Assembly (NCBI GenBank): GCA_051294905.1 | Contig: CM119385.1 | Coordinates: 16,182,001 to 16,246,000 of the forward strand | From: Botryllus schlosseri | Lineage: Eukaryota | DNA: 64,000 nt | Reading direction: 5' to 3' | Shown: piece after piece, positions 26,779 to 59,305 of the stretch | Position numbering within the stretch: the first letter of the stretch is position 1 | Layout of the letters: every line of letters begins with the position of its first letter | Notes under the pieces: model-generated | Told to the model about the DNA's origin: nothing | The model's input: only the letters and a program-made list of their open reading frames with translations | Database searches by the model: none | Program-made: the position numbers and the translations under genes

Positions 26779-28077
26779 TCAATCCTTATCGATGAACGCA
26801 ACCGGCGCTGCAATAATACTGATGGTGAAAGCCAACCATCCGAAAGCGAAACTGTATCCCCAATCTACGTTATCTTGTGCCACGAATGAGCTGTATAATC
26901 CGGTATACGACGCCATTCCTATCATGATGAAAATACCTGAAAGACATGGATTTATAAGAATATTTAGGGTTCATGGAAATCTATACGCAGCAGTTGTTGA
27001 CTTTATCGGTTAACTGAATGTTACAAATGACATAAAATGCCGATTGTCGTGGATAAACCGACGGAAGAATTGCTCGAGCGAACATGGCATAACTGTGACC
27101 ATAAATCTGTATCAAGGGTAAATTGTATCGAAATGATGGAAATATCATGATATTATTTTCGATATCTCGTGGTTCGATTAGTTGGTAGATTTGAACCATG
27201 CGTATGTTTGGTACACGCAGAAATAAGATGGGAAACATGTTCGCTCTCTTTGATCTGCCCTTCCGACAAGGACATTCGCTGTTGGTAATTGCTTTCGGGG
27301 TACTGCAAAGAAATAGTCTACCTCATGTAACCAGGATCGCGTACAGAAGATACACCTTTCCAGTAAGCGGTCAAAAATTTAATATCCATAGTAAGGCCAA
27401 TCTAATTTAATCTCAATACAGTAAAATCCATCCCTTAAAATCCGACTACCAACATGAATGACTCATGGACGAATTATACGGGATGTATACAAAATATCAA
27501 TGGTTTAGGAAGGAACTCTTTTATCTTTAGGGCCAAGTTAAACACACTTAATTCGCGCAAATATATTCGGTTCACTGTTATAAAGTTCCAAACACTCGTA
27601 CGACCGCGCACCTGGCGTTTCCAAGATTCTAACAATGTATTACGCTTCTAGTTACCTCCAACAAATGCTAACACTCCTCCGACTTTCGAAATCACTTCGT
27701 TCTCACTTCTGGCACCAGCAAAGCACAAAGCCCCAACGGCACACGAGAGTATCACATCAGCCATAACATTGAATGCGATTGCGACATTCTCAGCGTCCCC
27801 CTTGTTCACTGAAAAATCAAAACCAGCCGTCAGTCGGGAAATTGAAAAATAATGTTCCGATCTGCATACTTCACGAATCTTGGTGACACAACGAACTTGT
27901 TATCCGCTCGTACTCACCATCAAACTGTTCTCCGTCGGAATAATTTTGAAAAAGACCTTGAGCGTATGTTACATTCTCCGTAGTAACGTATATCCATCCT
28001 GGAGTTGTGATCGCAATGATGTCAACTAGTAGAGCAATCGCAAGGCCCCCTCCGCTGCCTATTTTCAAAAATCCCAT
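26779..28077 (-). CDS. G1: PMP-22/EMP/MP20/claudin-superfamily tetraspan protein, 156 aa
   Basis: join(28077-27918, 27808-27656, 26936-26779); exons 160/153/158 nt, both introns phase 1, canonical sites (GATG|GTGAGT, TTTCAG|, GGAG|GTAACT, TTTCAG|); four TM segments; TPGW...QGLF, YTG and WGYSFAFGW motifs resemble LIM2/MP20; AATAAA at 26656-26651. Confidence 0.9.
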
Positions 28078-31000
28078 TCTAATCTGGGTTCTGTTGAAAG
28101 ATAAAACTCGTAATTAAGAATGCTGTGCTATACTAATATACTGGACCGTACGCACTGCACAATGTACAAGTGCGGTGTAACACTCTACACTACTGTAGAG
28201 CGCACGTTCAACCTCACCCTCGGACGGCGATGATACTGTTCTTGCGAGTTCTTCGAACGAGAGTTTGTTACACGAGAACCATCATCGTACACCGGTCTTG
28301 TCTCCTAAATTCTTCAGCATCACGAGGCGCTCGTGTGATGTACTACGACGTATGTACGTTGGTGGTATATAAAGTGAATATATCTAAATTTATCCATGAT
28401 TATATGTCTCGTTGAGTACCCACGCATTTCGTCTGCCAATAAGAACACATATTAATCTGTTGGATTGCAACAACAGAAAACACATTTTGTGATATTTGTA
28501 GATTGGCGGGGAGGTGGGCCGTTGAAATGTCATCGAAATAATGGGATTGGTATCTTTCCGCTCCAATAGCCTCATATAATCGATGGGTTAAGCTTAATGG
28601 CAGAACACCCACCTATTCGATCATACCTACATAGAGGTCATATAGGTATTGGAATGAACCGCAAGCCGGGCCAGACCACAGACTCGCTTGTAAACCTGTC
28701 ACCCAGTACGGCTTCTCAGGTAGGTAGGCTCTCTGTGATAGTGTGGAGAAAAAGATGGTAGCGCTGACTAGATAGGCCTACTTCTTCGCGTCTACATCGT
28801 GCCACTAGTACTTCGATAACGAAGATGGAAATGAACTTATTCCTTCTTCCGTAACAAATATCTTTTCACCTGTACTTGTTCATTTTCTTGCCGAAAGAGT
28901 CGTTCGCATGAGTAGCTTTTAAGGCTGGTTTTATTTTCTGTTGCTTACCACAGCGAAAATGACATGCATGTGTAGCAGAGATGAGCTTTGAGCGTGGAAA
29001 TGGATTTGGTTCGGATATGGATTTACGAATATTCTAAAACTGGATTCAATCTAGGACAGGAAAGTTCTAATAATTTTCTATTTCATGTGACCTATGAACA
29101 AATTTCAATCATAGCGGATTTTGGATTTCGACATGATATAACTTTTATTCTGGATTTGGGTTTAAACCTAAGTTGTAGTGCTTGTCAGTCACATTCGGGC
29201 AATCATCGAAAATGCGTCGACTATTTTGCCTGTTTGTACAATTAATTTAGATATTAAAATATTGAGGTATATGGAATGGGCGTGACTAACATAGAAAATA
29301 TTCGTTAGTCGAATACCTCTACATATTGCGACGCTTCCATACCGATGACGATGTGGGGTCATTGGCCTGACTGCCTTATAATGCGATCAGCGATGTGAAT
29401 TCCTGCAATCATGAACACATGTCGAGATATCTCGACGAAATCCTATACAAACATTAGTTACACGGGTTTTCGTATACCAACCATTCGCAAAGACTAATTT
29501 ACCGGTCTCTGTGGACGATATCATAAGAAGAACGCAACCCATTCGGAATGTCTGACATATGTTGTATTGCGACGTATGTACTTTAATTTACAACCGCAAA
29601 AACTTTGATTTCAGAATGACGCAACTTCCATTTCCAACTTAATCTCCATAGCAACGTCTAAGATATGCTGTAGCAACGTATAAGGCGTTTGAAAAATCAC
29701 ATGTTATCATAAAGGAAAGGTAGATCAGCAACATTCACGGCATTAGGATTTGGCTGGACTGAAATGTCACCGACGACTTTAGAAAGTTATTTATGACGGA
29801 GAAAATCTATTCCGAAATATGAAATTGGTTATCCTTATCGCATGTTTGTCTTTACAATTCAATAATCGGGTTCTAGTATGTCGCAAATTTTAGTTAATAG
29901 ATTACGTAAGCAAGCTAGATATTATCCCCCTAGATGTCGCTACCATTGTACTATTACTTTTCCAATAATAATAACACAAGAAGTAGTTCAGTCTTTCAGT
30001 GTTGGGCATTAAAAGAATTGTGATTAATTCGTCCCAGTCTAATTTTAAAGTAACACCAATATCGGACAAAAAGTTATATGAAAATGGTACCACGAGCAAA
30101 GCAACCATCACTAAGGTATTGGACAGCAATTCCCAAAAATCTGCTGTTACATAGGGCTATAATTGACAGTTGCTGATTAAGAGATATCCATGAGATGTAG
30201 AATCGGAAAACCTCCGCTATCACTTGCATATACTCTGCCACATGTTTGTCCATGCGTTTTTTTAGCATTATGGATTCAAATTTCTATATCAACGCCTAAT
30301 CTTAAAGATTGTTAATTTGTATCACCCTTCTTCAGATCAAATGAGCGCACACGCAGCTTCGTATTACAACTTGTTGGCTTGACAGAATATAGAGAGGGAC
30401 ATGATGTCACATAGGTGAGGCATGTCAGATTGCTATAACTCCGATTCTTGGTACAGAGCTCGAATTTGGGTCTTAGCATCGTGAAACGATAGTTGAGATG
30501 TGCGTTGTGACTTGTGACTATAGGTCATGAAGACAACGATAGGACCTTGCACCAGCGAAGGATTAGTAGTACAGGTATCTACTATTATCTTCAGGGCGAG
30601 CTACAGAGGAACTGCTGACCAATGCAAGCATTTTGTCGCTCTGCGAATGAAGCCAGAACTCGAATTTTTGCTAAGTTGCAGGAACTGGATATGCCCGGCC
30701 GCTATTCCTAAAAAGGTTATTGAAATGCGAGGATATTAATTACTGTATCGGTTTCGGTGATGACTAAGTCGATGTCCTTTCGTTCTAAATACTGGAGTGA
30801 ATCCCAATTGTAACGCCATATTCACACCATCATAACAGACCGATCTATTCCGCCATCTAAAATCTTCCTTCCGGATACGCTAAGGTTACCATGTTTTGGA
30901 ATCGGGAAAGGAGGACGCTTTTTCAAAATTTTCAGACTTGTAATGCTGTAGTAAAATCCGGAAAAATGGTAAATTCACCACCAAAATGTGGCTGGCTGAC

Positions 31001-31169
31001 TAAAAAAAGAAAGGTCAACCTTCCGGCTCAACTCCCGAAATACAGTTTCTCTTTCACATTTTGCGTTGGGTTGACTAATCAAAAAGGTCGTCGCTCACGT
31101 TCGAACCACGAATTTTCTGTTTAGCGTAATTTATGCCCATTTTCACTTGAATCTATCCATCATGGAAGG

Positions 31170-32009
31170 CAGGGGCGGGCAACTTCTCCAGTCGGCGGGC
31201 CGGATATAGAAAAATTAGGAACTTGGCCGGCCGGATTGCTGAATCGATACATTATTCGCCCATTTATCCACATACACAAGGAATAAATCGTATTTAATGA
31301 CGGTATTTTAACGACAGCAATGTAACTTTGAAGCTATTTCTCGCCAATAGTGACGAAGACAATGTGGATTTGAGAACAGCATTGTCATATAGGCACCACC
31401 ATGTCTGCTTCTCTCTGATCAATCAACACGCGGTGCAATCCTTAATTAAGACTTCAAGGTGATCAATAAGCCCGGTACCCCAAATGTTCTAAGATATCAA
31501 TTCATTGGGGTTTAGTAGGTGACGAGACAGCGTGGCTTAACTGTGTGGCCTCTTTTATCTCGATATTGAATTCATGCGGGCCGCGGCCTCTACGAAATTT
31601 GAAAGTGGCGCCCGACTCGTGTTGAGTTGGCGAACCCTGGCATAAGCGGTGTCTTACAGAAGCCTACACGTGAGCCGTGCTACAAGTCGACGGTTACGGA
31701 ATCAAAAATAAGAAATATCGGCCTGGTGTAAATGACCATTGTAGTCGACAGACACCATTATTACCACAAATGGCATTAGGGTATAGTACATCGTAAATGC
31801 CGATAATGCAATAAGTCTTCTCGTTTCGACGAACTTACGCGTATAAGCGTCCCCCTCGCTCGCTGCGCATACATGTGTATAATGACATACAGTCACTAAA
31901 ATTGGGCGTATGTAAGCAGGTAGTGGGGAATATCGGAAAACTGGGGCCGCAGGCCACATTATCATGTAAGATGGAAAACTGTCCGCGGGCCGTCTGTTGC
32001 CCGCCATTG
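31170..32009. mobile_element. Nested CAGGGGCGGGCAAC-family MITE containing a foreign MITE end and a SINE fragment
   Basis: Starts CAGGGGCGGGCAAC, ends GTTGCCCGCCATTG; 31555-31639 matches the right end of the 38004 family; TSD not clean. Confidence 0.6.
31640..31770 (+). mobile_element. SINE 3' body fragment
   Basis: TAAGCGGTGTCTTACAGAAGCC...GGAATCAAAAATAAGAAATATCGGCCTGGTGTAAATGACCA is near-identical to 37360-37480. Confidence 0.7.
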
Positions 32010-32814
32010 ATCTAAGCTCTAAAAGCTGTTATGGAGGACAAATTGCCAAAAAGGAGGACATTTAGGCGTCCTCGGAAGACATTTTCAAAATCCTCGAAAA
32101 GAAGGACAAATCCTCCGAAAGGGGGACGTATGGTAACCCTAGGATACACATATGCATTATCGTCAAACTATGGATCAACTAATAATTGTCAAAATGATGG
32201 GGAGTGCCGAAGTGCATTTCTCACTAATTCCAAATAAATTCGGAGGTAATCCGGTAGTCAGAAATCCAATCGTCATCTTCGGACAATTGCTATGCACACG
32301 TCCCAGTATTGGACACAATCCGAATTTCATGTCGTGACACTAATTCGCGCAATGGACAGCTCAGATCATATCATTGTAAGTTGCCGGGAAATCAACGCAG
32401 TGTCTGCGATATCTGCATTCTGCAATCTTTCACTTTGAAACGCACGTCTGAATAGCAGTCCAAATATATGAGTTATTATGACAAAATGGGCGATAAAAGC
32501 ACATTTGATAGTGTTTGTGCTCTTCCAAGGCTGTGTTTTCCCGATAAACGAAAACCTAATAGCCATCGGAAAGCTGTCATCCATTTTCAGGCAGTCTCAG
32601 CGATAGCGGGCATAATGAATTTGCAACTATCTGAGTAAAGTTATCGAACATACTGGTGATTCTAATATCTGTCGCCGAATCAACGACGTCACGGATTACC
32701 TGAACAGCCGACGTAAATTACTGGAAGTTCGGCAACTGGATCTCGTCTATAAAGCAAAATTTTATATCCTGCAGATTGTTTGTTACGCTATATAGAAGCA
32801 ACAGCTACCATAGC

Positions 32815-35641
32815 ATGGGTTTATTTCATTTCGGAAGCGCTGGAGGCCTTGGATTTGCGTTGCTCTTTGAAATCATTGCGTTGTCCACACCGGGATGGGT
32901 TTATGTAACCACCAACACCACCATGTTGAACACCACTGGATTACCTCCATACTCGTATTACAGCGTGGTTAAATCCGGTGCTTTTGGACTGTTCCACAGT
33001 GAACCCGCGCTAGATACGGAATACGGACTGTGTAAGTCGACATGAAGATCCTATGCATGTATTGTATATAGCCTATCGCCACGCGTTCTTTGCTACAAGT
33101 GCATGTAATTGAAATGCGTTTCCTATGTTTTGGCAGATTTGGGAGGTACTGCTATCGCCTCATGCGCCTGCCTGCTATGCATCGGTATGGGGTACCTGTC
33201 GGTCGGTATAGCGGCAAATCTATACAGCGGAAATTTTATGGAAGAAAAGAAACTGGGAAAGGTTGGCGGTATCATGGGAATTGCGGCAGGTAATACTCCG
33301 GGTCCTGTGGGTTCGGTCCGGAATTAGTCATATAATTTTTCGTAAGACAAAGCCAAGTTATTTTGCAATTTTCCATGTGATTTTGAGAATTTTTCGAGTT
33401 TAGGCTCCATGAAAATATTTATATGAGAGCTGAAGCTATAACAAGGGTCACCATATTTTGGGATCCAGTAAGAAGGAAAATGTAAACTTAGATTACCGGA
33501 CTACAAAACTTGTGATTAAAATTTTTACGGGAAATCCTTTCACGTTGACTATAAGAGGTCATTTATCCAGCCCTACTCTCGAACAACTAGCCCAAACGTA
33601 CGCATTGCAGATTCGACGTCATTTCTGGCCTTTTTTAGTTGAGCCTGTCCATCAGCCTGGCTGTCAAAGCTATATAGGAAGACGTATTCACAAAAAGTAG
33701 GATATTTAGGCGTCGCCAGAGGACATATTGTAACCCTACTATAAAGCATATTGATGTAAGAATTTGATAATGATTTCATTGATCATGATTTGTCTGAGGC
33801 AGTATAAAACTATATTACTTAGTAAAGAAGTGCTACAAATACCATTTCGAACACGTCTTCGCCTCCGAATAACGCACTATAATTAGGGTTACACTACGTC
33901 CCCTTTTTTAAAAGGAATTGTCCTCTTTTTTTTAAAAATTGAAAGTGTCCTCGAAGGACGCCTAAATTTCCTATTTTTTGGAAATTTGTCCTATCTTTTC
34001 AAAAAAAGTATTCAAATGGCACGAAAATGTCGACATCCAGGCAGAATTCGTATGCAGAATTGTAGAAAAGGGGGTAATGTGGGATTCGATAAAAATGACG
34101 ACCCACAAAAGTATCGTTAAAAAGTGTGTTACGACTTTTTTTCAGTCAAGACAGTACTATCGGTCGAAAAATTTGCAAAATCACCAGTTTTCCTCTCCGG
34201 TGCTGGAGCTTTCAAATTGTCCTCTTTTTAAGATCTCAAAATATTGCAACCCAAACTATATTACCATTGTAATACATTGCGATAACTAATATGGTCACAT
34301 TCAATAGGATGGTGTATGAGTAGGGCCGGGCACAATGATTCGAGTACTCGAATCTGGATCAAGTATTAATTTTAATGATTCGAGTCGAGTAGTAAAAGAC
34401 AATTTTTTCGAGTACTGAAATTTTACGCTCCTCGCCACTGAAAGGTAATTTATCAATGAGAATTATAGTTACGATACTAATTTTCACTGTTGCAACCTTG
34501 AAACCCTGATTGGAGGTATCGTAACATACGAAACGTATAGTACAAAGCTACGAAGGTTGCTGGACGTACATTTCCGACGTCATGATCATCCCACAACATT
34601 GCAATCAAGTGGAATGCAATCGGTATGGTCGAAAAATACCAAAGTATCTTTAATGTGATGGATAACAGAAATTATATTCTTTGCGATGGCATAAAGCCAT
34701 AAACGGTACATATTTGAACATCGGCGTATTACATTCAGTTATGACGTCATAATGAGTGATACTCGATTACTCGACTCGACTCGAAGCATATTATGTGATT
34801 CCGAATCGAATCACTCAGGTACTCGATTTTGCCCATGCCTATGCATGAGCATCCAAATATTGGGTAACATGATGCAGCATTTGTGCAGTCCAGTCTATGA
34901 AAATCAATCTCGTCTCAACGTCAAACTTCATCGCAGATTTGGTTGGAATGGGCAAAATCGAATCACAGCCCATTCGCAACGGGCTCCAATATTGACGTCC
35001 GAATCAAATCGAATGACTACTTTTGAAACTATTTTAAGTTAATTGAATTATAACTCCTGTAGTATGTCAAAGCGTTCAGGTCGTGCACTGCACCACGACT
35101 ATCCGTGTTGCCCACGCTTTACACGCGACATCTTGTGGCTGACTTTCCAATAAAAAGTGCTGGCAACCAAGAATGTATTATTAACAGAGACAGAGATAAT
35201 TAATACTAAGTACCCCCGATGTGTCCATTCCAGTTGATCTCTTTTCTAATCATGAGATTCGAATAAATGTGACTCATTCGAATCGAACGGTCGAATCAGC
35301 GATTTTTGTATTTTTCATTCCCAGTAATCTTCAACATTCAATATTAACTCTTTCTCGTCATGCTAGGAATATTCATCATGATCGGAATGGCCTGCTTCAC
35401 CGGACTTATTTTCGACAACCCGTTCTACGAAAAGATTTCGAACGACCCAGATTGCTGCATGTACATGCCGTATTCCCAATACTGCAAAACTGGACAGCAG
35501 TCGCAGTTTCTCGATCGCCTGAATATTTCAAGTCGGCGCCCGACTTGCAGCATTGAATACAGCTGGGGTTACAGCTTCGCTTTCGGCTGGATGGTATTCT
35601 GCATCAGCACTATCTCGGGGGCTGTCGGCTTGCTCGGGTGA
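32815..35641 (+). CDS. G2: claudin-like tetraspan protein with Cys-rich extended second loop, 214 aa
   Basis: join(32815-33031, 33137-33289, 35367-35641); exons 217/153/275 nt, phase-1 introns, canonical sites; TPGWVY, GLF, KVGGIMG, SWGYSFAFGW motifs; AATAAA at 35863. Confidence 0.9.
33443..33738. mobile_element. TAGG-family MITE in G2 intron 2
   Basis: Ends AAGGGTCACCATATTTTGG / TTGTAACCCTA; imperfect TSD CTATAACA / CTATAAAG. Confidence 0.55.
33884..34254. mobile_element. TAGG-family MITE (reverse orientation) in G2 intron 2
   Basis: Starts TAGGGTTAC; GTCCTC motifs; TSD ACTATAAT / ACTATATT. Confidence 0.7.
34321..34841. mobile_element. hAT-type MITE (TCGAAT/CTCGA-rich) in G2 intron 2
   Basis: Ends TAGGGCCGGGCA / TGCCCATGCCTA; TSD TGTATGAG / TGCATGAG; relative at 61492. 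Confidence 0.75.
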
Positions 35642-36378
35642 ACTGTAATTTGAAACTCCCCTCGCGAGATAATTATGAAGCTGTTTCGCTGATTGTGTTT
35701 CGCTGATGGAGTTATTTTGTTTTGTGCCCGCCAAGAATTGGAAGATATTCTTTTGAATGTATCATTTTGTACTGATTGTATTATTTTAAGCACAAATGTG
35801 TTAGTGTCATCTAGCGTAAAGAATTCAACGCATTTTCCTCGACACGAATCAGTAACGAAATTAATAAAGTCGAGAAGTGTCGCAAAGATGTGATTCGTTT
35901 TACATGCTTATGCAGGCATAAAACTGCGTATATGCCACACATAAAAATTGTATACCTCTTCTCGTATTTTTGTTTCAACCCATGCAATGGTGAAGATTAA
36001 TTGATCGCGATCATCATTAGCATTGCATGATATTCCGGCTGTTCGTTACATATCAGAGTTGATTTAATGCTCGCTAACCAATGTTAACAAAGTGTCTTAG
36101 ATCAAAGTTTTAGATTTGTTTTGTAATTACCAGTATGCTCAATGTTTATTATCAATCGTAAATTATAATATTTGCCAACGTTACTATAGTAGGCATACAT
36201 AACATACAACGGATTGACTTAAATTACGATTGATTCACCGTAACCAACTTGATAACTCAAGTGGAAAGTAATTCCTTAAGATTGCATCGTACAAAGGTTG
36301 AGGACTAATTACGCATTATTTTTCCGAGAATTTCAGGTTCTAGGACGGTAAAGCGTACCTAAAGCCAGTAGGGCAATA

Positions 36379-39300
36379 ATGGGTTTATTCAGTTACGGAA
36401 GCTCTGGCGGATTGCTCCTCGCTTTAACGTGTACTATGACGTCACTCGCCACCCCTGGCTGGATATACGCTACGATATCAATTAGCAATCCACTGGCGGA
36501 TGTAAGTCGCAGCTATTCTTTCGGATTGTTTTACAGTGAACCGCGTCTTATCACGTTTGGTCGATCCTACGCATATGGAGATGGGTTATGTAAGTATTTA
36601 TGTCTCACGTCTATTCTTAGTTTCTCACACCTACACCTCTAACGTTATGAAGGCGGCATGTACTAGTTTACAACTTTATCAGGGAGTACTCGACTATATA
36701 CGTAACTTCACAAAGTTGATTTTGTCCATGGGTGGCTTATTTAACAGTTAATCCGACGTGAGCACATTCGATTAACGCAAAATGACCAATGACATTACAA
36801 TTATGTGCAATTTTCTAAAATGTATTCAGTTGCCGTGATACAGGGGCTCTTTCGAAGTCTTCATGACAACTTAACTCCTAAGAGTGATGCAAGCAAATTC
36901 TGAAACTACTTTCTACTGTACAAAATCCAGAGTTTAAAGCAGTGGTTCCCAACCTTTCTCGACTCATCGCCCCCTAATCAATCTCGACACAAATTCTGGC
37001 CTCCCTTATTCACGGATCCTAAAAAGAGTGTGATCGGGAAATTTATGCACATAACTCTGATCGCTGGTGAATTGACTGAAAAAATGCCATTTTCCGAGGT
37101 GGTAGGTGCTCGGATAACAGGTTTCCGCGTCTACTTTCCGCTTAGTAGACCTTATTTCGCATCACATGCAGGATGAGCGGTCTTCACCTGCATTTTTGGC
37201 CTTGTTAATTGAATAGATCTCACTGGACATTCGAACATTTTCGCCCCCTTGTTTCTCAAAATCGCCCCTGGGGATGGGGCGATATCGCCCACGATGGAAA
37301 TCACTGGTCTAAGGAACCAGTAGTTTTGCTCAGAATACTGTTAAGCCATCTCATCCGCGTAAGCGGTGTCTTACAGAAAGCCTAGAAGTGAGTCGTGCTA
37401 CTGGTCAGCAGATACGGAATCAAAAATAAGAAATATCGGCCTGGTGTAAATGACCATAGCAGTCGACAAGCACCATGAACACCACACAAACTAACAAACA
37501 AACAATACTGTTAAGCAGAATTGGAAGTATATAGTATAAAAACAGAATGATACTTGATTACTTAGCACAAGTAGTCAAAACCTAATTGAGTACTCGTTAA
37601 AAGTTGAAAGACTTATTCACCGACCATCCTCTACTTTTGGGCCTTATTATGGTTCATGTAATAGCCAGTGTTGGGATGACTCAAGTCAACTTTTTCGTAT
37701 GAATTGAGTTGACTCGACTCACTTCGTAAAAATGACTTGACTTGACTTGGTGCTTCAAAAATGTGGATTGACTCGTGACTCGAAGCAAAATTTACGAGTC
37801 AATTTCAAGTCATCAACTAACGGTGTCGATTAAATCACTCTATCTCAATCATGTTTGGATTGTTCGTGACACGCCGGTGCGACTTGTCAAAGCAACCAAT
37901 CTTTCATGGCTTGTATGTTTCACTGATCCTCCATTGTCACATCACAAATACATTGACCGCAAACGAAATGATCACAGCCTGCGTAAATTTACTAGTAGTA
38001 AATCAGGGGTCACCAACACGCGGCCCGCGAGGTCATATTTAGCGGCCCGCGACGTGATTTGAGATTTCGGAAGAAAGCTGAGAAAACCATTTTGAAATGC
38101 AGTTTCAAGTATTGTTGTTGTTGTTGTTGTTTCAAAATAAGCTATTCGCCTGTGCCCAACCTCACTATTCGTCACCAGCTAAAACGGCTTTGGATATGGC
38201 AACAGCATTCCATCGAGGGAGAATAATCCGCTGAAATGAATGGGCTGGGCATATTGCCTTGAAGTGCAATGTCCAAAACACTGCCAAGATCGAGACGCTT
38301 AGAAAACGGCATAGGGAAGTGGTTCACTGAAAGGCGCGCCCCTCTTGTGGGGGCGAGTGTGAAAGCATATGAAGGTGGCGCGGAGCTGCGGTCAACTGAA
38401 AATTTTTTCGCGCCCTGCGCGATTTACGTTCAATTTACCTTTTGTGTATGGTCCGGAATTCATTATATAGAATTCTCTCGTCAACAGTCAGAACCTTCCA
38501 TGCCTTCAAACTATCCGTTTGGATTGCTAGCATTCTGGTGGCATTTTGTGATATGACGATAAGGGGAGCGAACGTTTTCAGTAGCATAAAGGGGGGCGTG
38601 TCGAAAAATGTTTGAGAACCACTGGCTTAGGGCTTCTCCACAAGATCAAGCTTTACGTGGAGATGGTATTTCAGCTAGTAACGTATCTCGTTAGCCCCAA
38701 TATCGATTCCTTATTCGCTGAAAAACGTTTCCAGTATCGTGCACAGCTCAGAGGTCAAAATAAAATGAAATTAATGATAATGATTTTTTGTTGTATTTGT
38801 AATCCTTTGATAAAATATTACTTCTTTTGTGGTCACTACACCCATTGCCTAAATTAAGTAGCACGGCGTTGTACTGACGTAGAGTTTTAAAACGGTGGTT
38901 GCCTAGTTTATACCGATATTGAATTCATGCGGCCCGCGCCCGCTACGAAATTTGAAAAGTGGCCCGCGACCCGTCTTGTGTTGGCGACCCCTGTAGTACA
39001 TTAATATAATAGCAATATATCTGTGTTTGTTAGACTACTCAGTGCATTTATTACACCGTGGTCGCCTTAATCAACTCTCTTGTATGATTTAAATAGAACG
39101 AATATAGTTTATGCGTTTATATTCTCGCGGATGTGTAGATGGGTTGTGTACTTCTCGAGGCTTGGTATTCGATCCTCTATTTTGGCTCACGTATTTCATT
39201 AGCGGTCCTGTGAGCGATACAACGCCATTTTGTTTGTATATTTAACCGTGTATTCGTTATTTGATTCAATATAGTTATAAATGGACAATCAATCTTTCTT

Positions 39301-40239
39301 CCAGACACCTACTAAAATGTAATGAGTTTGAATCATAACCCATACTTCGAAAATTCAATTTGACTTGAATTGTGACTTGACTCGTGACTTGACTTGGCTG
39401 GACTCGACTTGACCCGAGTCACCTCCAAAAAACGAGTGACTTGGCTCGACTCGAGTTATCTTCGAAAATCGATTGACTTGACTTGACTCTAGTCAAAATG
39501 GTAAATGACTCGAGATGACTCGTGACTCGAAGGTAATGACTTGATCCCAAAACTGGTAATAGCCTATCAGACTCAGGCCCATAGTTAATAGCAAATCCAA
39601 TACATGTCTACCGCTCTTCTTAATATCTTACATCTTGTGTTATTTACACACTATATTTAGAGCAATGTTGAACCGGATAACATTTTGAGAAATAGGCCTG
39701 TTACAGAATTAGCGATCGTGTTGGAATGTATAAACAACACAAAACCGCCGACTTTTACGTTAACAAATCAGAATGCTGTGGTCGTAATGTATCCATGTTA
39801 TAGACATTTCGTCGGATGCAATGTCAGTCTGCACGTGCTGCTTATGCGTCGGCCTAAGCTATATCAGCGTGGGCGTACTAGCCACCAGCCTTCGGGGAAA
39901 TCTCATTCAAAACAAGCGACTGGGTAAAGTGGGAGCGATCATGGGACTCATAGCAGGTCGGCTATCGCACAAAATCCTGTTTAGTATTTCAGCCTGGGGT
40001 TGATCGCTAACTATCATTCTACGTTGTCAGGAACGGTGATGGCGATTGGGATGGGAACATTCACTGGGCTTACTCTATCATGCCCTTTTTACAAGAATGT
40101 TATTCTCGACGGCCCGTCACTTTCTACCTACTCTTGGGGATACAGCTTTGGTTTGGGTTGGGCCGGAGTTGCACTGAGTTGGATATCTGGGATTGTCGGT
40201 CTCTTAGATAAGCCGACTCCAATCGTTCATCCTACGTAA
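36379..40239 (+). CDS. G3: claudin-like tetraspan protein, 190 aa
   Basis: join(36379-36589, 39804-39956, 40031-40239); exons 211/153/209 nt, phase-1 introns (3214 and 74 bp), canonical sites; same motifs as paralogs; AATAAA at 40318. Confidence 0.9.
36940..37306. mobile_element. hAT (Charlie-like) MITE in G3 intron 1
   Basis: Ends CAGTGGTTCCCAAC / GATGGAAATCACTG; TSD GTTTAAAG / GTCTAAGG. Confidence 0.7.
37347..37503 (+). mobile_element. 5'-truncated SINE with 13-bp TSD
   Basis: Flanked by direct repeat AATACTGTTAAGC (37334-37346, 37504-37516); (ACAA)n tail; body matches the 1321-1480 copy. Confidence 0.8.
38004..38993. mobile_element. Nested hAT MITE (CAGGGGTCACCAAC family)
   Basis: Ends CAGGGGTCACCAACAC / GTGTTGGCGACCCCTG; TSD TAGTAAAT / TAGTACAT. 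Confidence 0.8.
38317..38624. mobile_element. Third-level nested MITE
   Basis: Ends AAGTGGTTCAC / TTGAGAACCACTG; TSD GCATAGGG / GCTTAGGG. Confidence 0.6.
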
Positions 40240-45140: not shown

Positions 45141-48100
45141 ATGGGCCTGTTTCATTTTGGAAGTGCGGGCGGATTAGGAATTGCGCTGATTTGCGTGCTC
45201 GTTTCGTTGTCAACTCCAGGATGGGTTTACGTTACCATCCTGCCAACTGCAGCCGGAGTTACGCCCGATTATTCGGAGTCGTCGATTGCATGCGGTCTGT
45301 TTTACAGTGAACCGCAACTGAACAATTTTGGCGGTAATATGGATTACGGAAATGGACTGTGTGAGTATACAATATTTAGGTTTTATAGATAAATAAGGAC
45401 GTTGCAATATTGTCACGGAATATGCAAGAAAATGTTAGACAACGAAACGATTAACTCGAATGAACGTATTAATTGAGATGGTTGGTGTTGCTAAAGTCAA
45501 TTCACTTTGGCACCGACTATAGGGGAGTGTTCCTTAAACTTGTTAACATTTTGATCGCTCCTAGCCTATGATATTTCAAAACATTTTCCGTCCTATCTTT
45601 CCACAATGTGTGGCGATACTAAATCAAATTGTTTTGATAGGAATTAATTTCAATGCGTTTACAACTTACGTGTTAAATGCACGAATTACGAACAGCCTTG
45701 AAAGCCGTGTTGGGTGAGGAAATTTATGACGCGACGAGGATTCAAATCTTCGAGAGAAGTCGCAAAGCAAAGCATTCGGAACATATTAACCGCACGGAGA
45801 ACTCACCACGACATCAATTTTGACACTTTATTTATTGCTTGATTATATTTTCAAGTTATTCGATATTCCATATGGTTACAATACCATCAGCGCAAATATC
45901 GCAGACAATCGTCGGCATGCACTTAATTGCCGCCATGATGACCTGGCCAACGACCCAAAACTATTCCACTTTTTCTATTCGCACTGTTTCACAGACATAA
46001 CTTCTACGCAAACCTCGGTGTGTATTTGCTGCATGTGCGTTAGCCTGGGCTTCCTCGTAGTCGGCATAATGGCTAATTCATTCACTGGTAATTTCATCCG
46101 CGAAAGACGACTAGCTAAAGTCGGCGGAATTATGGGACTCGTCGCTGGTAAGAATATTTTTTGTCTGATTTTAAATCAGCAATGTTTCAACGTAGCGTTC
46201 TAAGTGGTGTGGACAGGGACATAGCGAGATTGAACGGCTCACTGCATTTGGGTTACGTCATACTTTCATTTTGGCCAAAGGCAATAGGCGTTTTGCAGGA
46301 CTTCGATCACGTGACTAGATACGCATAGCAACCACAAATTGGTTAGCAAGCTACAGTGCTAAATATCGCATAGTGTACTGTTGATTTCTGGTTGTAAACG
46401 TTTCGGAAATTTGTTGTAGAAGTCATCAGAGATTTACCTATGCTAGATGTCAATCCCGTACAAAGCACATAGAATGATATCGTCAGAATTACGCAGAAAT
46501 CCGTCGTTAACGTAGCCGTATTTCGGATACAGTATATTATCGTTTTCGGGCTGTAAACGTTCGCAAGTGTCATGGAGATGCGCAAGGATTCAAATATGTT
46601 GGATGTCTTTGATTCATGAACTATGTAACCTCCTTGCGTCAAAATGATCGACATTGTAGCCGTTATTTGGTAGTCAACTATGATTTCATGACACAAAATT
46701 CGACATTGCAGGACATTGACTGCATGATATTTATTGCAGCATTAAGTTAGGTGTGGATAGTATAGTATACTATACTATAGTTGTATTGTAGTGGTAGTTG
46801 GTAATCATTTCAGCATTTCGATGATTGATATCGATTGCAATATATATATAGGATACCGCCTAGAGACAATGACTGCCAGTGCCAGTACGTTGATGTGTTA
46901 TGAATTCATGCAATGTGCTACATACCATATATATATTAAACATCCTATGCTATTGTATGGCTTCTCAGTTGAACAATTTAAAATATTTAGACCTCTACAC
47001 CTATATTACAAGTTATTGATCATTCTGTCATGCTGCCAAGTGCCACTACCCGAAGAAAAATGATCATCAGCTCCAATTGAGGGTGCAACAAACTGTCCCG
47101 AGGCCTGGATTACTTGATTGATTGCCTGGATTGGATTACTTCACTCTATGGCACAGTGCAAATATCTTGAGTTTCAAGACATGGCTATACCACATGTATA
47201 CGAATTAATGATCTGACGAATTATCCCAAGAGAGCCGAACGTAGGCAACTAAGAAATTGATGATGCCCTCGTCAAGAATTCAGCCTGGAGCCAATTATTA
47301 TCACCACATAAAATTCGGTCATGCGGTAGAAGGCAGCGTGGTTTCATGCCAACAGAAAATGTCAGCAGATGATCTGACCACTGACTAACTGTCCTGAACT
47401 TCTTTCCCGATGTTGATGTCTGCTTTGAAAATGATATTTCATTTGTGTACAGCAAGACAAGCGCTCTTCCGTGGATGCTATATGTCTAGACAAGTGGCTA
47501 TGGAGGTAGAGGAAAATACATAGGCATAAGAGTCTCGGCAGTTATTGAACTTGATAAGGTTAACATGCATTTTTCTTCAACTATTTCTTATGCTCTGGGT
47601 ATCAAATGCACAAAGATTAATAAATTGCACTTCTTTGCAAGTTTATTTGTAAATTCAATGAATCAAAGAATATCATAAGTTCAGAATATTACGGAGTCAA
47701 TGCAAAAGAAACAATGTTAGTCGTCTTTAGAGGATGTTTCTAAGTTGGTTGAACCAATACACAGACGGGGTCAGCAACGAAGTACTATTTTACCCGAGTA
47801 CTAGCGTCATTATGAGTTTAGGCTACTTCCACTTCTTCTTGACACTTTTTAGGTAGTACTTTTTTGTCAGGTTTGGGATTTTGTCAACTAGAAAGTAGCT
47901 TTGGCGCATGATTGCATCCCTTCAAGCGTGAGGTTGTCATAACAACTGTGCAAAATAGCCCCAGTACCACGGTAACTAAATTAATTTTTGAAAATTGCAC
48001 CTATTTGTGGTGTCATCACCCTTTTGCGTTGATCAAGAAGATGCTACATGCAATGTTTACAATTGTCCCATGGCATCAATTTCTAAAACTAGGTGACCCT

Positions 48101-49774
48101 CAACCAAATCTACTTCATGTAACGAATTTCTTGACTACTTTCCAGAAATTCATTTCTACTTCCACTTGAAGTACTTTGGACATGTTCTGGAAGTAATTAG
48201 TGCTACTTGTACTGGAGTATAAATTAAGGCATTACTTCTACTCGGTTCCCAACAATGACCACGTTGACCACCTCTGGGTATAGGATGACCGATCTTGTCA
48301 CTGCGTTTGAGCTGCTCTAAGAGTTATTTGATAGTTATTTCCCTTAGTTCGCTAAATAGCACACATATGTGACATCAACTATTTATCAAAATCGCGTGTG
48401 AGTTGCCAAATCCACTTTAATTGCAGTTGCGAAGTAGTGCTAATAAAATCGGCATTGTATAAGGCAACAATAAAGTGCACTGCTTTGCTTAGTCTTGATG
48501 GCAGGTTCTCCCAAAAGATACTTCCGATGTGTTCAGCGACATTTGTTTTATAGAAGCACGCCAGCACCCAAACCAGCAGACAGTATATCCTGATCCTTGC
48601 GGGTCCCGGCTGCTTCAGTCATATCATCCATCCAAAATCAGGCTCCACAACAGACAAATAGTACTGCTTGAACTAACAAATACTCTTACCAGAATATAAA
48701 CCAATCGCTTTACTTCAAATGCATAAATTTAAGTAAATATGATCAGAGTTGAGGACCGTAATACGACTACGTTACCGATGGATTTTTGCGTAATTCTGAC
48801 GATATCATTCTAAATGCTTTGTACAGGATTGACATCTAGCATAGGTGGATCTCTGATGACTTCTACAACAAATTTCCGAAACGTTTACAACCAGAAATCA
48901 ACAGTACACTATGCGATATTCAGCACTGAAGCAGGTGCGCTAGAAAGTAGCTTGCTAACCAATTTGCGGTTGCTATGCGTATCTAGTCACGTGATCGCAG
49001 TCCTTCAAAAGGCCTATTTTACGGCCATTTTTGACCGGCTTGCCGAGCGGTAAAATATGGTAAAATATGCAGGTATCAATGGAAAGCTGCTGCTGTACTG
49101 ATTACGAGAATATAAATTATATTCTGCTCATGGTCATGGGACCCCACCAAAATCAGCCTCGAATTTTGCATTGTGTGACGCAACATTGCTGTCAGTCTCT
49201 TTCTCCCTGAGCTGCAGTCTCGTTTTGCCTGACAGAATTGTTGCGTCACAGTGCCAAAGTCGATCACAGTGCATAAATCCGAGACTGATTTTGGGGGGGT
49301 TCCACGGCCATGATCGGAATAAAATTTATATTTTCGTAATCAATACAGCAGCAGCTTTCCATTGACACCCATTCTATCAAACTTAGCGCTCGGCAAATCG
49401 GTCAAAAACGGCTGTAAAATTGCCTTTGGCCAAATTGAAAGTATGAAGTAGTCCCAAATGCCGTGAGCCGTTCAATTTGGGACAATATGGTTTCAACATC
49501 GCCTTCAACTAGATCATTATTTCAATCACTTTTTTCTGCTATTTCAAGTGTGAACGTTGTCTTGATTTTAGGAATTTTCCTTCTTATCGGAATGTCTGTC
49601 TTCACGGGATTGGCGCTGTCCACTCCGTTTTACCGGGACTTCGTGTTTGGCGATCACGATTTCGTAACCATATCGTGGGGATACAGCTTCGCTTTCGGGT
49701 GGACAGCGACTGCCATTAGCCTGCTCTCTGGAGTCGTTGGTCTTCTTGGGAATTCTGATGGCATGTCTAAATGA
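45141..49774 (+). CDS. G4: claudin-like tetraspan protein, 191 aa
   Basis: join(45141-45360, 45995-46147, 49572-49774); exons 220/153/203 nt, phase-1 introns (634 and 3424 bp), canonical sites; AATAAA at 49787. Confidence 0.9.
47762..48276. mobile_element. Nested MITE (CAGAGGTGGTCA family, AAGTAG-rich)
   Basis: Ends CAGACGGGGTCAGCAACG / GTTGACCACCTCTG; arms match the 50731/54316 element; no clean TSD. Confidence 0.55.
49017..49419. mobile_element. ~400-bp foldback element inserted in the right TIR of the intron element
   Basis: Near-complete self-complementarity (TTTTACGGCC...CAATGGAAAGCTGCTGCTGTA... / ...TACAGCAGCAGCTTTCCATTG...GGCTGTAAAA); interrupts sequence that is contiguous in the left TIR. 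Confidence 0.75.
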
Positions 49775-49989
49775 AGAGGATGAAAAAATAAATCGAAATT
49801 AGTGCTTGTATGATAAATGAAATTATGCACGCGCCGGCGAGAGAGTTATATTCGGAGGTTTAGGGAGTCAGCAGTGATATCACCAATGATCAGATATACT
49901 TGAGAGCAAACAGAGATTCAAAGGTCATTTATTTCAAGGGAAAGATTATTGTCCCATGCTATATATGTCATTGTACAATGCATCATTCG

Positions 49990-56023: not shown

Positions 56024-56976
56024 CGGTGTTGGGATGACTCGAGTCATTACTTGAATGGAGTCACCTTTTTCGTATGACTTGACGTGACTCGAGTCACTTT
56101 GCAAATAGTACTTGACTTCACTTGACTCGAGTTTCAAAAATGCAGATTTACTCGTGACTCTGAGGAAAATTTACGAGTCAATTCCAAGTCATCAAGTAAT
56201 TTGTGTCGATAAAAATCGCTGCATCATTCATATGTTCGGATAATTCTCGATACGCTGGCGTGATCTATGAGAGCGACCAATTTCATTCATTCAATGATGT
56301 CGCGTTTTGCTGAACCTCCCTTGTTCTATCACAAATAAGTTGACCACAAACGACGTGATTGGAGCTTACTGCGTTGGTTGTCGTCAAGTAGTAGGGAATT
56401 AATAGCAGAGTATCCATCAATGTTCTATCGATTGGTCATTGGTGCCCGGTTCTCAACTTAACCAAACCTCCTGTATAATTCAAATTGATTTCGAATATAG
56501 TTTATATTACTAGTCAACCATTGGCTCAGGCATAAATTGTATCCCATGGATATATAATTGGGTAGAGCATCTTATCACATCGTTTCAACTATCTGAGATT
56601 TCATATTCTATGCTCTATTTTGGCGGATAATTATAGAGGGTGGGTGTACCGTTCCTTACGCAGTATAAAAATTATAAGCATGCGCGAGCTTTACAACGCC
56701 TTTTTGTAAGTCTATATATTCTATAATCGGTCGTCGATTTAAAATCAATGACGAATGCAAGAACTCACACCGCGTACTTCAAAAAGACAACTCGACTTGA
56801 ATTGTGATTTGACTCGTGACTTGACTTGACTTGACTCGACTTGTTTCGAGTTACCTCTAAAATCGAGGGACTTGGCTTGACTCGAGTCACCTTAAAAATC
56901 GACTTGTTTCGAGTAAAAATGTGCAATGACTCGAGATGACTTGGGACTCGAAGGTAGTGACTTGATCCCAACACTG
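56024..56976. mobile_element. CAGTGTTGGGAT-family MITE 300 bp upstream of G5
   Basis: Ends CGGTGTTGGGAT / ATCCCAACACTG; TSD GCCTACGC / GCATACGC; 953 bp. Confidence 0.85.
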
Positions 56977-57275
56977 GCATACGCACAAAATAAACTGCTA
57001 GAAGGTATTACGGGATCAACTAACAGTGGAGACAAATCGCACTACTACCACATTAAGCACCGTCTTATACCCGTTCTTGTGATTAAGACGACGTGCATTC
57101 GCCTACTGTACAACTGTGCCTTATTACGCTAACTGTTATTGCTTTGAAGTTACATGATATTTTTTACAATAATTTAACCCACCATATTGCGTGCAGAATA
57201 AGCCCATACAACCCGTTATTAACGGTAATACATCACATAAGAAGCAGAGCTATATTTCGTTTTAGGATAAGGGTT

Positions 57276-59305
57276 ATGGGCTTGATTCAATTTGGAAGTG
57301 CGGGCGGATTAGGAATTGCGCTGATTTGCGTGCTCGTTTCGTTGTCAACTCCAGGATGGGTTTACGTTACCATCCTGCCAACTGCAGCCGGAGTTACGCC
57401 CGATTATTCGGAGTCGTCGATTGCATGCGGTCTGTTTTACTGCGAACCACAACTGAACAATTTTAACGGTACCACGAAGTACGGAAATGGTCTGTGTGAG
57501 TACAGTGTTTGTGTTTGAATGACGTACCCGGGCATTGGGAATATTGGGAATATTGTAAAAATCAGCGATGTAGCGCGTAAAACGTCAGGAATCCATTATT
57601 CAGCGCATGTCAATTGTGCGAAACGGATTGAATATGGAACGTCTGTGTAAACGTTGATGGGCACAGGCATTTGATAGGGTCGATGATCTAGAGAAGCGCT
57701 TGGAACTTTTTCGGTGCTGCGAATTTAGGTTTCGGGTTACACAAATTTATCATCTATAATTGAATATACTATTTAATTGTATATTGAAGTTCTGTACCTA
57801 CAAGAAGCTGTTCGTTTATCATTTAACAGTTGGAATAATTCGTCTTTTTTAGTAAAGATTGTTCAGGGTACCGCTTGGTCAAAAGGAGCTAAATCATCAT
57901 AGCTGAAATGATCGGCACCGAATAATCCCATGCCCGCAGCTTCGCGATATAAACGCGATTCGCATAGAAAAATAATGTGCCCACTGCCCAGTGACAAAAT
58001 TCAAATTTGGAATCGAAGGAGATTTTCTAAATCAGACACGCCCCTTTTATGATGGTGTAATATTTCGCCCCCCTCTTATCGTCGTATCACAAAATGCAAC
58101 CGGAGTGCTAGCAATCCTAACGGATAGTTTGATGGTATGGAATGTTATGACTGTTGATGACAGTATTCTGAAATATGGTATTTGGACTATACACAGAGCA
58201 ATAACTATGAATTGGAGGTATTTCGCACGGAGCTCGTAAAAAAATTTCAGCTGACTGCAACTTCCGGCCCCCTTCTGGTGCTTTCACGCCCCTAGTTTGA
58301 GAACCACTGCTCTAAATCGTCGTCGGTTCTACAGTTAGCAAGTAGTGAGTAGACATAGATTTATGGTACGGATTAGGTGTTGTGATGATGATGACCGCCG
58401 ACCGTAAAAATGCTGCATAGCGATGTGGTCCCGGTTAAAGTTATTGTTGGTCCGTTTATGACAGTGCTTTTAACCCTTGTCGCCGAAGGATGCACATTTA
58501 CCCTATATTTTCAATTGTCTATGGCCATCCCATGTGACGTCAGAATTAAAGATTGGTGACATCATGGCTAGAATAAAACACACAATAAGAACCTGTTTGT
58601 TTTAAATGTAACCCTACCTGTACTGCTAACTAGCAAAACGTAAAAGATTTTAGGGTAAATTGCGGGTAAATGTGTGCAAGGAAAAGGCCCAACTGAATTC
58701 AGCCCATCCGGAGTTTTATATATCCATGAAATGGCGGAGCAAGCAGATGATAATCGCCCTTATTTATGTGCCACTATTGTGATGATATTATGGCTAGAGA
58801 TCGTGCTCAACATTTTATCCAAGTATACGTGCTGTTTTGCAGACATAACCTCCACCCAAGCCTCTGTGTGTAGCTGCTGCATGTGCGCTAGCCTGGGCTT
58901 CCTCGTGGTCGGCATAATGGTGAATTCGTTTACTGGCAATTTCATCCGCGAAAGACGACTGGCGAAATTTGGTGGAATTATGGGTCTCGTCGCCGGTAAG
59001 AAAAACTGCCTTGAAATTAATATTCAGCTACATTGAAATGAATTTTTCTAACACTGCGGGTTAACATTACCGTGATTTTAGGATTTTTTCTGGCGACCGC
59101 GATGTCTGTTTTCACGGGATTAGCGCTGTCCACCCCATTTTATCGGGACGTTGTGTTTGGCAAGGATAATTTCGGAACCATCTCGTGGGGATACAGCTTT
59201 GCTTTCGGATGGGCTGCAACTGGGACAAGCCTGCTTTCTGGAGTTGTGGGACTTCTCGGAAAGTCCGGGGGTGTATCTCCCGAGAAACACGAGTTAGATT
59301 TATAA
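57276..59305 (+). CDS. G5: claudin-like tetraspan protein, 198 aa, closest paralog of G4
   Basis: join(57276-57495, 58843-58995, 59082-59305); exons 220/153/224 nt, phase-1 introns (1347 and 86 bp), canonical sites; ends EKHELDL; AATAAA at 59334. Confidence 0.9.
58305..58610 (+). repeat. GATGATGATGACCGC-family repeat in G5 intron 1
   Basis: Homologous to 49990-50295 and 63740-63860. Confidence 0.6.

What the first reader, a model, noticed from the sequence alone, without database searches (positions are those of the whole stretch)
26779..59305. Five-gene cluster of atypical claudin-like tetraspans lacking the ECL1 cysteine pair
Seen: five intact paralogs with the same exon plan, W...GLF in loop 1 and WGYSF.FGW before TM4, but no Cys pair after GLF. 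The apparent GLC at the end of exon 1 in G2-G5 is a read-through artefact; splicing gives Tyr. TMs are conserved while loops vary in length, sequence and N-glycosylation sequons (G1 NVT/NYS, G2 NTT x2/NIS, G5 NGT, none in G3/G4 loops). Known: claudin/PMP22/MP20 proteins normally carry W-GLW-C-C with a disulfide. Inference: a lineage-specific subfamily with a non-tight-junction role such as variable surface recognition or another junction type.
Basis: partly seen in the sequence, partly recalled or inferred. Interest (0 to 1): 0.8.

Follow-up and report, generated by a model that had tools for sequence, protein, structure and literature searches.

The report
Tunicate claudin-like tetraspans lacking the disulfide
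The five genes are real, intact and at least partly transcribed, but they are one corner of a family of 25 or more small four-helix membrane proteins of the claudin/PMP22/EMP superfamily that is shared with the sea squirt Styela clava. The whole family lacks the usual loop disulfide, which makes it an uncharacterised variant of a known protein kind rather than a new kind.

Summary

Transcriptome contigs from three studies and raw RNA reads show both G2 junctions, so splicing gives Tyr rather than the read-through Cys. They also support the G3 exon-1 donor.

None of the five proteins has the claudin Cys pair after GLF. G4 has one loop-1 Cys and G5 has two, flanking GLFY.

The cluster is larger than five genes:
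- G6, G7, a lone exon 3 and a divergent copy lie just past the window end.
- The genome has at least 23 last-exon matches on three chromosomes. All modelled copies share the exon plan and lack the Cys pair.
- Canonical W-GLW-C-C genes coexist in the same genome.

The closest database proteins are six clustered Styela clava genes, named "uncharacterized" or "EMP2-like". All pass Pfam PF00822. G1 groups with one of them, and G2-G7 form a derived long-loop clade.

The fold of the Styela G1 relative matches CLDND2, EMP1, MP20 and TARPs. Two intron positions match those of PMP22.

dN/dS is 0.17-0.33, which is purifying selection and gives no support for variable recognition.

The most likely role is an EMP/PMP22/MP20-like membrane adhesion or organiser protein, not a tight-junction strand former. 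That function is inferred, not shown.

The parts
27918..28077 (-). G1 exon 1 (start codon, TM1, loop 1 with W...GLF and sequons NVT and NYS)
   Evidence: Model; family HMM 65 bits
27656..27808 (-). G1 exon 2 (153 nt; TM2, intracellular loop, first half of TM3)
26779..26936 (-). G1 exon 3 (rest of TM3, short loop 2, WGYSFAFGW, TM4, stop)
   Evidence: PF00822 22.3 bits on this exon alone
32815..33031 (+). G2 exon 1
   Evidence: donor at 33031 seen in RNA contigs from X1, X4 and X8 and in X21 reads
33137..33289 (+). G2 exon 2 (153 nt; Cys-rich outer end of TM2)
   Evidence: both junctions seen in RNA
35367..35641 (+). G2 exon 3, with a loop-2 insertion of about 30 aa carrying four Cys and an NIS sequon
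   Evidence: RNA contigs cover it without a gap
35642..36316 (+). G2 3' UTR (approximate end)
   Evidence: X1 contig of 1363 nt runs to 36316
36379..36589 (+). G3 exon 1
   Evidence: X1 and X8 contigs and X21 reads. The X8 contig continues 30 nt beyond 36589, which marks the spliced donor
39804..39956 (+). G3 exon 2 (153 nt)
40031..40239 (+). G3 exon 3 (WGYSFGLGW)
45141..45360 (+). G4 exon 1. Positions 45156-45305 are identical to the matching stretch of G5 exon 1.
   Evidence: an X4 loose end carries the shared G4/G5 sequence
45995..46147 (+). G4 exon 2 (153 nt)
49572..49774 (+). G4 exon 3
   Evidence: an X4 RNA contig runs on into sequence unique to 49704
57276..57495 (+). G5 exon 1 (C-GLFY-C, sequon NGT)
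58843..58995 (+). G5 exon 2 (153 nt)
59082..59305 (+). G5 exon 3

Best explanation
The five genes are functional paralogs within a tandem array of at least nine gene copies. That array belongs to a genome-wide family of 25 or more small four-transmembrane proteins with the claudin fold (Pfam PF00822 superfamily).

The family is shared with the ascidian Styela clava, so the host genome is most likely a related tunicate. G1 is the conserved short form, with a Styela counterpart. G2-G7 are a derived clade with long loops. That clade arose by tandem duplication with some gene conversion and is kept under purifying selection.

The whole family replaces GLW with GLF (GLI, GLY or GLS in four divergent copies). 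It lacks both loop-1 cysteines, has almost no cytoplasmic tail and has no PDZ-binding end.

The most likely mechanism is inferred, not shown. The proteins would act like EMP/PMP22/MP20 proteins: their small extracellular beta-sheet would make lateral or cell-to-cell contacts and organise membrane domains or partner proteins in particular tissues. They would not polymerise into sealing tight-junction strands, a job that the canonical W-GLW-C-C claudins of the same genome can do.
For: Gene structure and transcription:
- Canonical splice sites in phase 1/1 and intact frames.
- RNA contigs and raw reads show the G2 junctions and the G3 donor; there are traces of G4 or G5 transcripts.
- The share of G1 words held by RNA-like runs (0.29-0.34) is about its exon fraction.

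Family size and uniform exon plan.

No Cys pair in any of 27 family proteins, while a canonical control has it.

Styela clava relatives:
- All six pass PF00822 (34.9-36.3 bits in my scan of P0004 and P0010; precomputed hits for the other four).
- Three of them sit in tandem, with the same three-exon plan.

Homology of the window genes: the spliced G1-G7 proteins match a profile built from Styela proteins only, end to end, at 81-210 bits. Shuffled controls reach at most 8.7 bits, and hhalign gives probability 99.9%.

Fold and sequence relatives:
- AlphaFold model of the G1 relative P0004: pLDDT 83, pTM 0.78.
- It matches CLDND2, EMP1, claudin-1, MP20, PERP, TMEM47 and TARPs at TM about 0.8.
- The PDB profile search matches human MP20 over its full length at E = 1e-5.
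- ESM Atlas look-alikes are EMP1, EMP2 and molluscan PF00822 clusters.

Intron positions: introns before TM2 and in mid-TM3 coincide with the PMP22 exon 3/4 and 4/5 boundaries described in PMC9552464.

Selection: dN/dS is 0.17 for G4/G5 and 0.30 for G6/G7.

Canonical Cys-pair genes are present elsewhere in the genome.
Against: - No functional, localisation or tissue data exist for any family member.
- The fold and the Pfam threshold were tested on Styela relatives, not on the spliced window proteins.
- On single exons, PF00822 reaches only 20.7-22.3 bits against a cut-off of 26.7.
- The affinity to EMP/PMP22/MP20 rests on similarity rankings and intron positions, not on a phylogeny that includes vertebrate proteins.
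- TARP gamma-8 scores slightly better than MP20 in the PDB sequence search, though only over TM2-TM4.
- The organism's identity is inferred from best hits only.
Confidence: 0.6

Rival explanations
1. Variable surface-recognition molecules: the loops diversify under positive selection to discriminate partners, self from non-self, or pathogens.
For: - Tandem birth-and-death array.
- Loops differ in length, sequence and glycosylation sites.
- G2 gained a four-Cys loop-2 insertion.
Against: - Loop dN/dS is 0.30 for G4/G5 and 0.33 for G6/G7, well below 1.
- G1 keeps a clear Styela counterpart.
- The ectodomains are tiny, 25-50 residues.
- Only two young pairs could be tested, and no population data were used.
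Confidence: 0.1
2. Auxiliary subunits that bind and tune a channel, receptor or ubiquitin-ligase complex through their transmembrane helices, in the way TARPs and calcium-channel gamma subunits or MOSMO do.
For: - The best PDB sequence match is TARP gamma-8, at E = 3e-6 over TM2-TM4.
- The best solved-structure matches are TARP gamma-2 chains.
- MOSMO clusters are among the ESM Atlas look-alikes.
- The transmembrane parts are the most constrained regions.
Against: - TARPs carry the Cys pair and a long C-terminal tail with a PDZ ligand. The tails here are 0-15 residues.
- The PDB holds many TARP chains, which biases the rankings.
- Twenty-five or more paralogs would be unusual for a dedicated subunit.
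Confidence: 0.15
3. True occluding-junction components that form paracellular strands despite lacking the disulfide.
For: - Claudin fold with W and GL retained.
- From general knowledge, tunicates have vertebrate-type tight junctions.
Against: - There is no Cys pair, no PDZ ligand and no sizeable tail.
- Canonical claudin-type genes exist in the same genome.
Confidence: 0.1
4. Decaying duplicates or annotation artefacts with no function.
For: A lone exon 3 lies beyond the window, and divergent copies exist.
Against: - All five frames are intact.
- Spliced RNA is present.
- dN/dS is well below 1.
Confidence: 0.02

Closest known systems
Styela clava predicted proteins XP_039265862 (LOC120341423), LOC120340315, LOC120341593, LOC120341588, LOC120341547 and 'epithelial membrane protein 2-like'
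   Same: - Same family.
- Same three-exon plan.
- Same TPGW...GLF loop without a Cys pair.
- Same WGYSF motif.
- Tandem clustering.
- G1 shares 60% of P0004's residues in the exon-wise alignment and groups with it in the tree.
   Different: - The Styela proteins are all of the short form, 151-161 aa.
- No long-loop G2-G7-type protein was found in any database.
Vertebrate PMP22 / EMP1-3 / MP20 (LIM2) group
   Same: - Size and minimal tails.
- Claudin fold at TM about 0.8.
- A G(Y/W)S(F/Y)..(G/A)W motif before TM4.
- Introns before TM2 and in mid-TM3.
- NCBI's automatic 'EMP2-like' name.
   Different: - Those proteins keep W-GLW-C-C. In the MP20 alignment its two Cys face non-Cys family positions.
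- PMP22 has an extra intron between TM1 and loop 1.
- Orthology was not tested by phylogeny.
Classic strand-forming claudins (for example claudin-1, -3, -4, -19)
   Same: Four-helix fold with an extracellular beta-sheet; W and GL in loop 1; Pfam PF00822.
   Different: No Cys pair, no C-terminal PDZ ligand, and tails of 0-15 residues.
TARP / voltage-gated calcium-channel gamma subunits
   Same: Best sequence and solved-structure matches in the PDB, over TM2-TM4.
   Different: From established knowledge, TARPs have the Cys pair, a longer loop 1 and long regulated C-tails. These proteins have none of those features.
Divergent invertebrate pfam00822 proteins (C. elegans VAB-9 and others; Pfam Claudin_3, PF06653)
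   Same: Precedent for superfamily members that lack key residues of the loop-1 motif (PMC3879130). PF06653 matches exon 1 weakly, and P0010 above the cut-off.
   Different: A different lineage. VAB-9 lacks the W of GLW rather than the cysteines, and no close sequence relationship is shown.

Membership tests
Claudin/PMP22/EMP/MP20 superfamily (Pfam PF00822) | Four transmembrane helices, with a large loop 1 and a small loop 2 forming an extracellular beta-sheet (claudin fold) | tested here: met
   The AlphaFold model of the G1 relative P0004 has four helices and four short strands, with pTM 0.78. It matches CLDND2, EMP1, MP20 and TARPs at TM about 0.8. G1-G7 align end to end to the Styela profile.
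Claudin/PMP22/EMP/MP20 superfamily (Pfam PF00822) | PF00822 score at or above the curated cut-off of 26.7 bits | tested here: inconclusive
   The cut-off is met by the Styela relatives P0004 (34.9 bits) and P0010 (36.3 bits), and by precomputed hits for the others. The window genes could be scanned only exon by exon: exon 3 alone gives 20.7-22.3 bits. Indirect support comes from 81-210 bits against the Styela-only profile.
Claudin/PMP22/EMP/MP20 superfamily (Pfam PF00822) | Loop-1 signature W-x(n)-GLW-x2-C-x(8-10)-C | tested here: not met
   W and GL are kept, the second W is replaced by F, and both Cys are absent in all 27 family proteins. The control P0012 has the full motif.
Classic strand-forming claudins | C-terminal PDZ-binding motif (typically -YV) on a cytoplasmic tail | tested here: not met
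   The C-termini read FIDKD, VGLLG, IVHPT, DGMSK and HELDL, on tails of 0-15 residues.
Classic strand-forming claudins | Forms tight-junction strands in junction-free cells | not testable with these tools
   Needs expression plus freeze-fracture electron microscopy.
PMP22/EMP/MP20 subgroup | Conserved coding intron positions (TM1|loop 1, loop 1|TM2, mid-TM3) | tested here: inconclusive
   Two of the three positions coincide at the domain level (against PMC9552464). The TM1|loop 1 intron is absent, and intron phases in vertebrates were not compared.
PMP22/EMP/MP20 subgroup | Groups with vertebrate EMP/PMP22/LIM2 in a phylogeny, to the exclusion of claudins, TARPs and TMEM47 | not tested
   Vertebrate sequences could not be obtained. 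Only similarity rankings are available.
TARP / calcium-channel gamma subunits | Long cytoplasmic C-tail with a PDZ ligand, and the loop-1 Cys pair | tested here: not met
   Tails are 0-15 residues and there is no Cys pair.

The most novel reading that the evidence does not exclude
Tunicates turned the single-lineage EMP/PMP22-type tetraspan into a large radiation of 25 or more genes per genome that gave up the disulfide-stapled loop 1. One clade (G2-G7) rebuilt its ectodomain with longer loops, a Cys-rich outer end of TM2 and, in G2, a four-Cys loop 2. On this reading the family would underlie a tunicate-specific kind of cell contact or cell-matrix interface, for example epidermis to tunic or blood-cell adhesion, that has not yet been described molecularly.
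Probability: 0.15. Interest if true: 0.6.

Novelty: new variant of a known kind. Interest (0 to 1): 0.35.

Why it matters
The loop-1 disulfide is treated as a hallmark of the claudin/PMP22 superfamily and is thought to stabilise the extracellular sheet. Here a whole expanded family is conserved between two ascidian genera, is expressed and is under purifying selection, yet does without the disulfide. That makes it a natural test of what the disulfide is needed for.

It also suggests that the tunicate counterpart of vertebrate EMP/PMP22/MP20 proteins diversified far more than the vertebrate one. The practical value is modest: better annotation of 'uncharacterized' ascidian genes, and a set of candidates for tunicate-specific cell contacts.

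Tried and rejected
Searches that led nowhere:
- A word-indexed protein search with G5 exon 1 found only an 80-aa exon read-through from a related species' genomic contig.
- A full HMMER scan of 1.84 billion representatives with the exon-3 profile gave 11 hits. The usable ones were two full-length Styela family proteins and one canonical protein; the rest were exon fragments and two long multi-domain proteins that I did not examine.
- A mixed profile of Styela proteins plus window exons found no further full-length relatives and no G2-G5-type protein.

Steps I could not take:
- The spliced G2-G5 proteins have no reference, and I did not type them in. So Pfam, AlphaFold and database searches were not run on them directly.
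- Read laying allows only one call, so the junctions of G1, G4 and G5 were not seen directly.
- Gould et al. 2005 on Ciona PMP22-family proteins is not held.

Literature: searches for this family in ascidians found nothing specific.

Readings rejected:
- Read-through Cys at the exon 1 end, contradicted by RNA.
- Pseudogenes, contradicted.
- Extra family exons hidden in the window; none were found.

Large ORFs at 23172-24342 and 61305-61766 have no Pfam match.
Full report
**Observation**

I rebuilt the five genes from the sequence. Each has three coding exons, GT..AG introns and phase 1 at both junctions.

| Gene | Strand | Exon 1 | Exon 2 | Exon 3 | Length |
|---|---|---|---|---|---|
| G1 | minus | 27918-28077 | 27656-27808 | 26779-26936 | 156 aa |
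| G2 | plus | 32815-33031 | 33137-33289 | 35367-35641 | 214 aa |
| G3 | plus | 36379-36589 | 39804-39956 | 40031-40239 | 190 aa |
| G4 | plus | 45141-45360 | 45995-46147 | 49572-49774 | 191 aa |
| G5 | plus | 57276-57495 | 58843-58995 | 59082-59305 | 198 aa |

Exon 2 is 153 nt in all five genes. A six-frame scan of the whole window with a family HMM finds exactly these 15 exons and nothing else.

**RNA evidence**

- Transcript contigs from three different studies (X1, X4, X8) join 33031 to 33137 and 33289 to 35367. Raw RNA-seq reads (X21) show the same two joints.
- The exon 1/2 junction therefore gives Tyr.
- The contigs cover the G2 loop-2 insertion without a gap and run on to about 36316, which marks the 3' UTR.
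- G3 exon 1 is covered, and an X8 contig continues 30 nt past 36589, as expected for a spliced donor.
- Loose ends of X4 contigs carry sequence unique to G4 exon 3 and sequence shared by G4 and G5 exon 1. At least one of those two genes is therefore transcribed.
- For G1, RNA-like runs hold 0.29-0.34 of the sampled words, which is about the exon share of the stretch. This is suggestive only.

**Cysteines and motifs**

None of the five proteins has two Cys after GLF. Two details need correcting. G4 has one loop-1 Cys, directly before GLF. G5 has two, flanking GLFY.

G3 reads WGYSFGLGW. The C-termini are 0-15 residues long and carry no PDZ-type ending.

Between the older paralogs, the transmembrane and intracellular parts are 57-62% identical and the loops 47%. 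All length differences lie in the loops.

**The cluster is larger than five genes**

The window is G000:C15:16182001-16246000, in a genome of 495.5 Mb. Directly downstream lie:
- G6 and G7, both intact and of the same plan
- a lone exon 3
- a compact divergent copy

The exon-3 profile finds 23 matches in the genome:
- the array studied here: the five window genes and three further exon-3 matches just downstream
- a second group of six on C15, at 16.37-16.45 Mb
- five on C5
- three on C3
- one at C15, 20.66 Mb

I modelled 16 of the out-of-window copies. Nearly all best models again have phase 1/1 and a 153-nt exon 2. Every one has W...GL(F/I/Y/S) and no Cys pair.

PF00822 alone passes its cut-off on the last exon of many of these copies.

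The same genome also has canonical genes with W...GLW..C...C, and two genes with GLF plus the Cys pair. The Cys-less family is therefore an addition to the standard claudin-type genes, not a replacement.

**Relatives elsewhere**

The database searches returned six full-length relatives, all from Styela clava. They are named 'uncharacterized protein' or, in one case, 'epithelial membrane protein 2-like'.
- All six pass PF00822. P0004 also passes PF13903 and P0010 also passes PF06653.
- Three of them sit in tandem on chromosome record OZ123525.1, with the same three-exon plan.
- None has the Cys pair after GLF. P0004 has a C-x2-C before GLF.

In a maximum-likelihood tree:
- G1 groups with P0004 (support 94/94).
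- G2-G7 form a clade with 100/100 support on a long stem.
- That clade is weakly linked (80/91) to P0017 and P0010, which are the neighbours of P0004 in Styela.

This fits a conserved local arrangement in which the G1 type stayed short and its neighbour expanded and lengthened its loops in this lineage.

The host is thus most likely an ascidian related to Styela. This is inferred from best hits only.

The spliced G1-G7 proteins match a profile built from the Styela proteins alone at 81-210 bits, end to end. Shuffled versions reach at most 8.7 bits, and hhalign gives a probability of 99.9%.

**Fold and closest known families**

The AlphaFold model of P0004 has pLDDT 83 and pTM 0.78, with four helices and short loop strands. 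I could not fold the window proteins themselves.

- **Foldseek, reviewed proteins:** CLDND2, EMP1, claudin-1, MP20, PERP, TMEM235 and TMEM47, at TM about 0.8.
- **Foldseek, solved structures:** TARP gamma-2 and the MicroED structure of human MP20.
- **Family profile against PDB sequences:**
  - TARP gamma-8, E = 3e-6, over TM2-TM4 only
  - MP20, E = 1e-5, over the whole length
  - claudin-19, E = 2e-4
  - In the MP20 alignment, its two loop cysteines face non-Cys positions of the family.
- **ESM Atlas look-alikes:** EMP1, EMP2 and molluscan PF00822 clusters.

The intron before TM2 and the intron in mid-TM3 fall where the PMP22 exon 3/4 and 4/5 boundaries are described (PMC9552464). The PMP22 intron between TM1 and loop 1 is absent here.

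Taken together, the nearest known kind is the PMP22/EMP/MP20 group. I did not test this with a phylogeny that includes vertebrate proteins.

**Selection**

| Pair | All | TM | Loops |
|---|---|---|---|
| G4/G5 | 0.17 | 0.11 | 0.30 |
| G6/G7 | 0.30 | 0.18 | 0.33 |

These are Nei-Gojobori dN/dS values. Older pairs are saturated at silent sites. The loops are less constrained than the helices, but there is no sign of positive selection.

G4 and G5 share a 150-bp identical run in exon 1 (45156-45305), while exon 2 is 86% and exon 3 is 78% identical. This points to gene conversion.

**How it most likely works**

*Shown:*
- The genes are intact.
- G2 is spliced as modelled and G3 exon 1 is transcribed, with traces of G4 or G5 transcripts.
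- The young pairs G4/G5 and G6/G7 are under purifying selection.
- The family belongs to the claudin-fold superfamily.
- It lacks the Cys pair and a PDZ-binding tail.

*Inferred:* without the tail and the disulfide, and with canonical claudins present in the same genome, these proteins probably do not build sealing strands. They more likely act like EMP/PMP22/MP20 proteins, as small adhesive or membrane-organising tetraspans whose paralogs differ in their ectodomains for different tissues or partners.

*Rivals:*
- auxiliary subunits of channels or receptors, in the manner of TARPs or MOSMO
- true junction strand formers
- variable recognition molecules

The recognition idea is the least supported, given the dN/dS values.

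**Novelty**

Divergence from the loop-1 motif is already known in invertebrate pfam00822 proteins (PMC3879130). PMP22-family genes have been reported in Ciona (Gould et al. 2005, cited in PMC2714311 and PMC3828561), but I could not read that paper.

I found no paper describing this Cys-less ascidian family. In the databases it exists only as uncharacterised predictions, and no G2-G7-type long-loop protein was found there.

I rate it a new variant of a known kind, of moderate interest.

Noticed in passing
window 32810-32815: The X1 transcript contig for G2 carries 38 nt upstream of about 32810 that do not lie on the genomic stretch, and an AG sits right before the start codon. This could be a 5' UTR exon or a trans-spliced leader.
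   Followed up: no
window 34143-34938 and 36929-38700: Parts of G2 intron 2 and G3 intron 1 reach summed contig depths in the thousands in transcriptome assemblies, with many loose ends. They are probably transcribed dispersed repeats.
   Followed up: no
window 45156-45305 and 57291-57440: A 150-bp run is identical between G4 and G5 exon 1, while exons 2 and 3 are 86% and 78% identical. This suggests gene conversion.
   Followed up: yes
window 33160-33190, 39830-39860, 46020-46050, 58870-58900 (start of exon 2 in G2-G5): The long-loop clade G2-G7 has a Cys-rich outer end of TM2, four Cys within 8 residues (for example C-x-C-C-x-C in G4). G1 and the Styela proteins lack it.
   Followed up: partly
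window 35420-35565: The G2 loop-2 insertion of about 30 residues, with four Cys and an NIS sequon, is present in the RNA contigs. It is therefore part of the mature transcript.
   Followed up: yes
L003:3127-3393 (G000:C15:16269127-16269393): A lone family exon 3 with an intact frame but no exon 1 or 2 found nearby. It may be a gene fragment.
   Followed up: no
L033:5247-5525 (-) and L021:7012-7281 (-): Two genes elsewhere in the genome combine a family-like TM1/W region and GLF with a retained Cys pair (GLF..C...C). They may resemble the ancestral state.
   Followed up: partly
L031:2298-2525 and 4506-4973 (G000:C6, about 18.54 Mb): A distant copy has a Cys-less W...GLF loop and a last exon with a YGYAYILGW motif, which from memory is reminiscent of PMP22. 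It may be the nearest counterpart of vertebrate PMP22/EMP.
   Followed up: no
window 23172-24342 and 61305-61766: The only other ORFs of 140 aa or more in the window have no Pfam match.
   Followed up: partly
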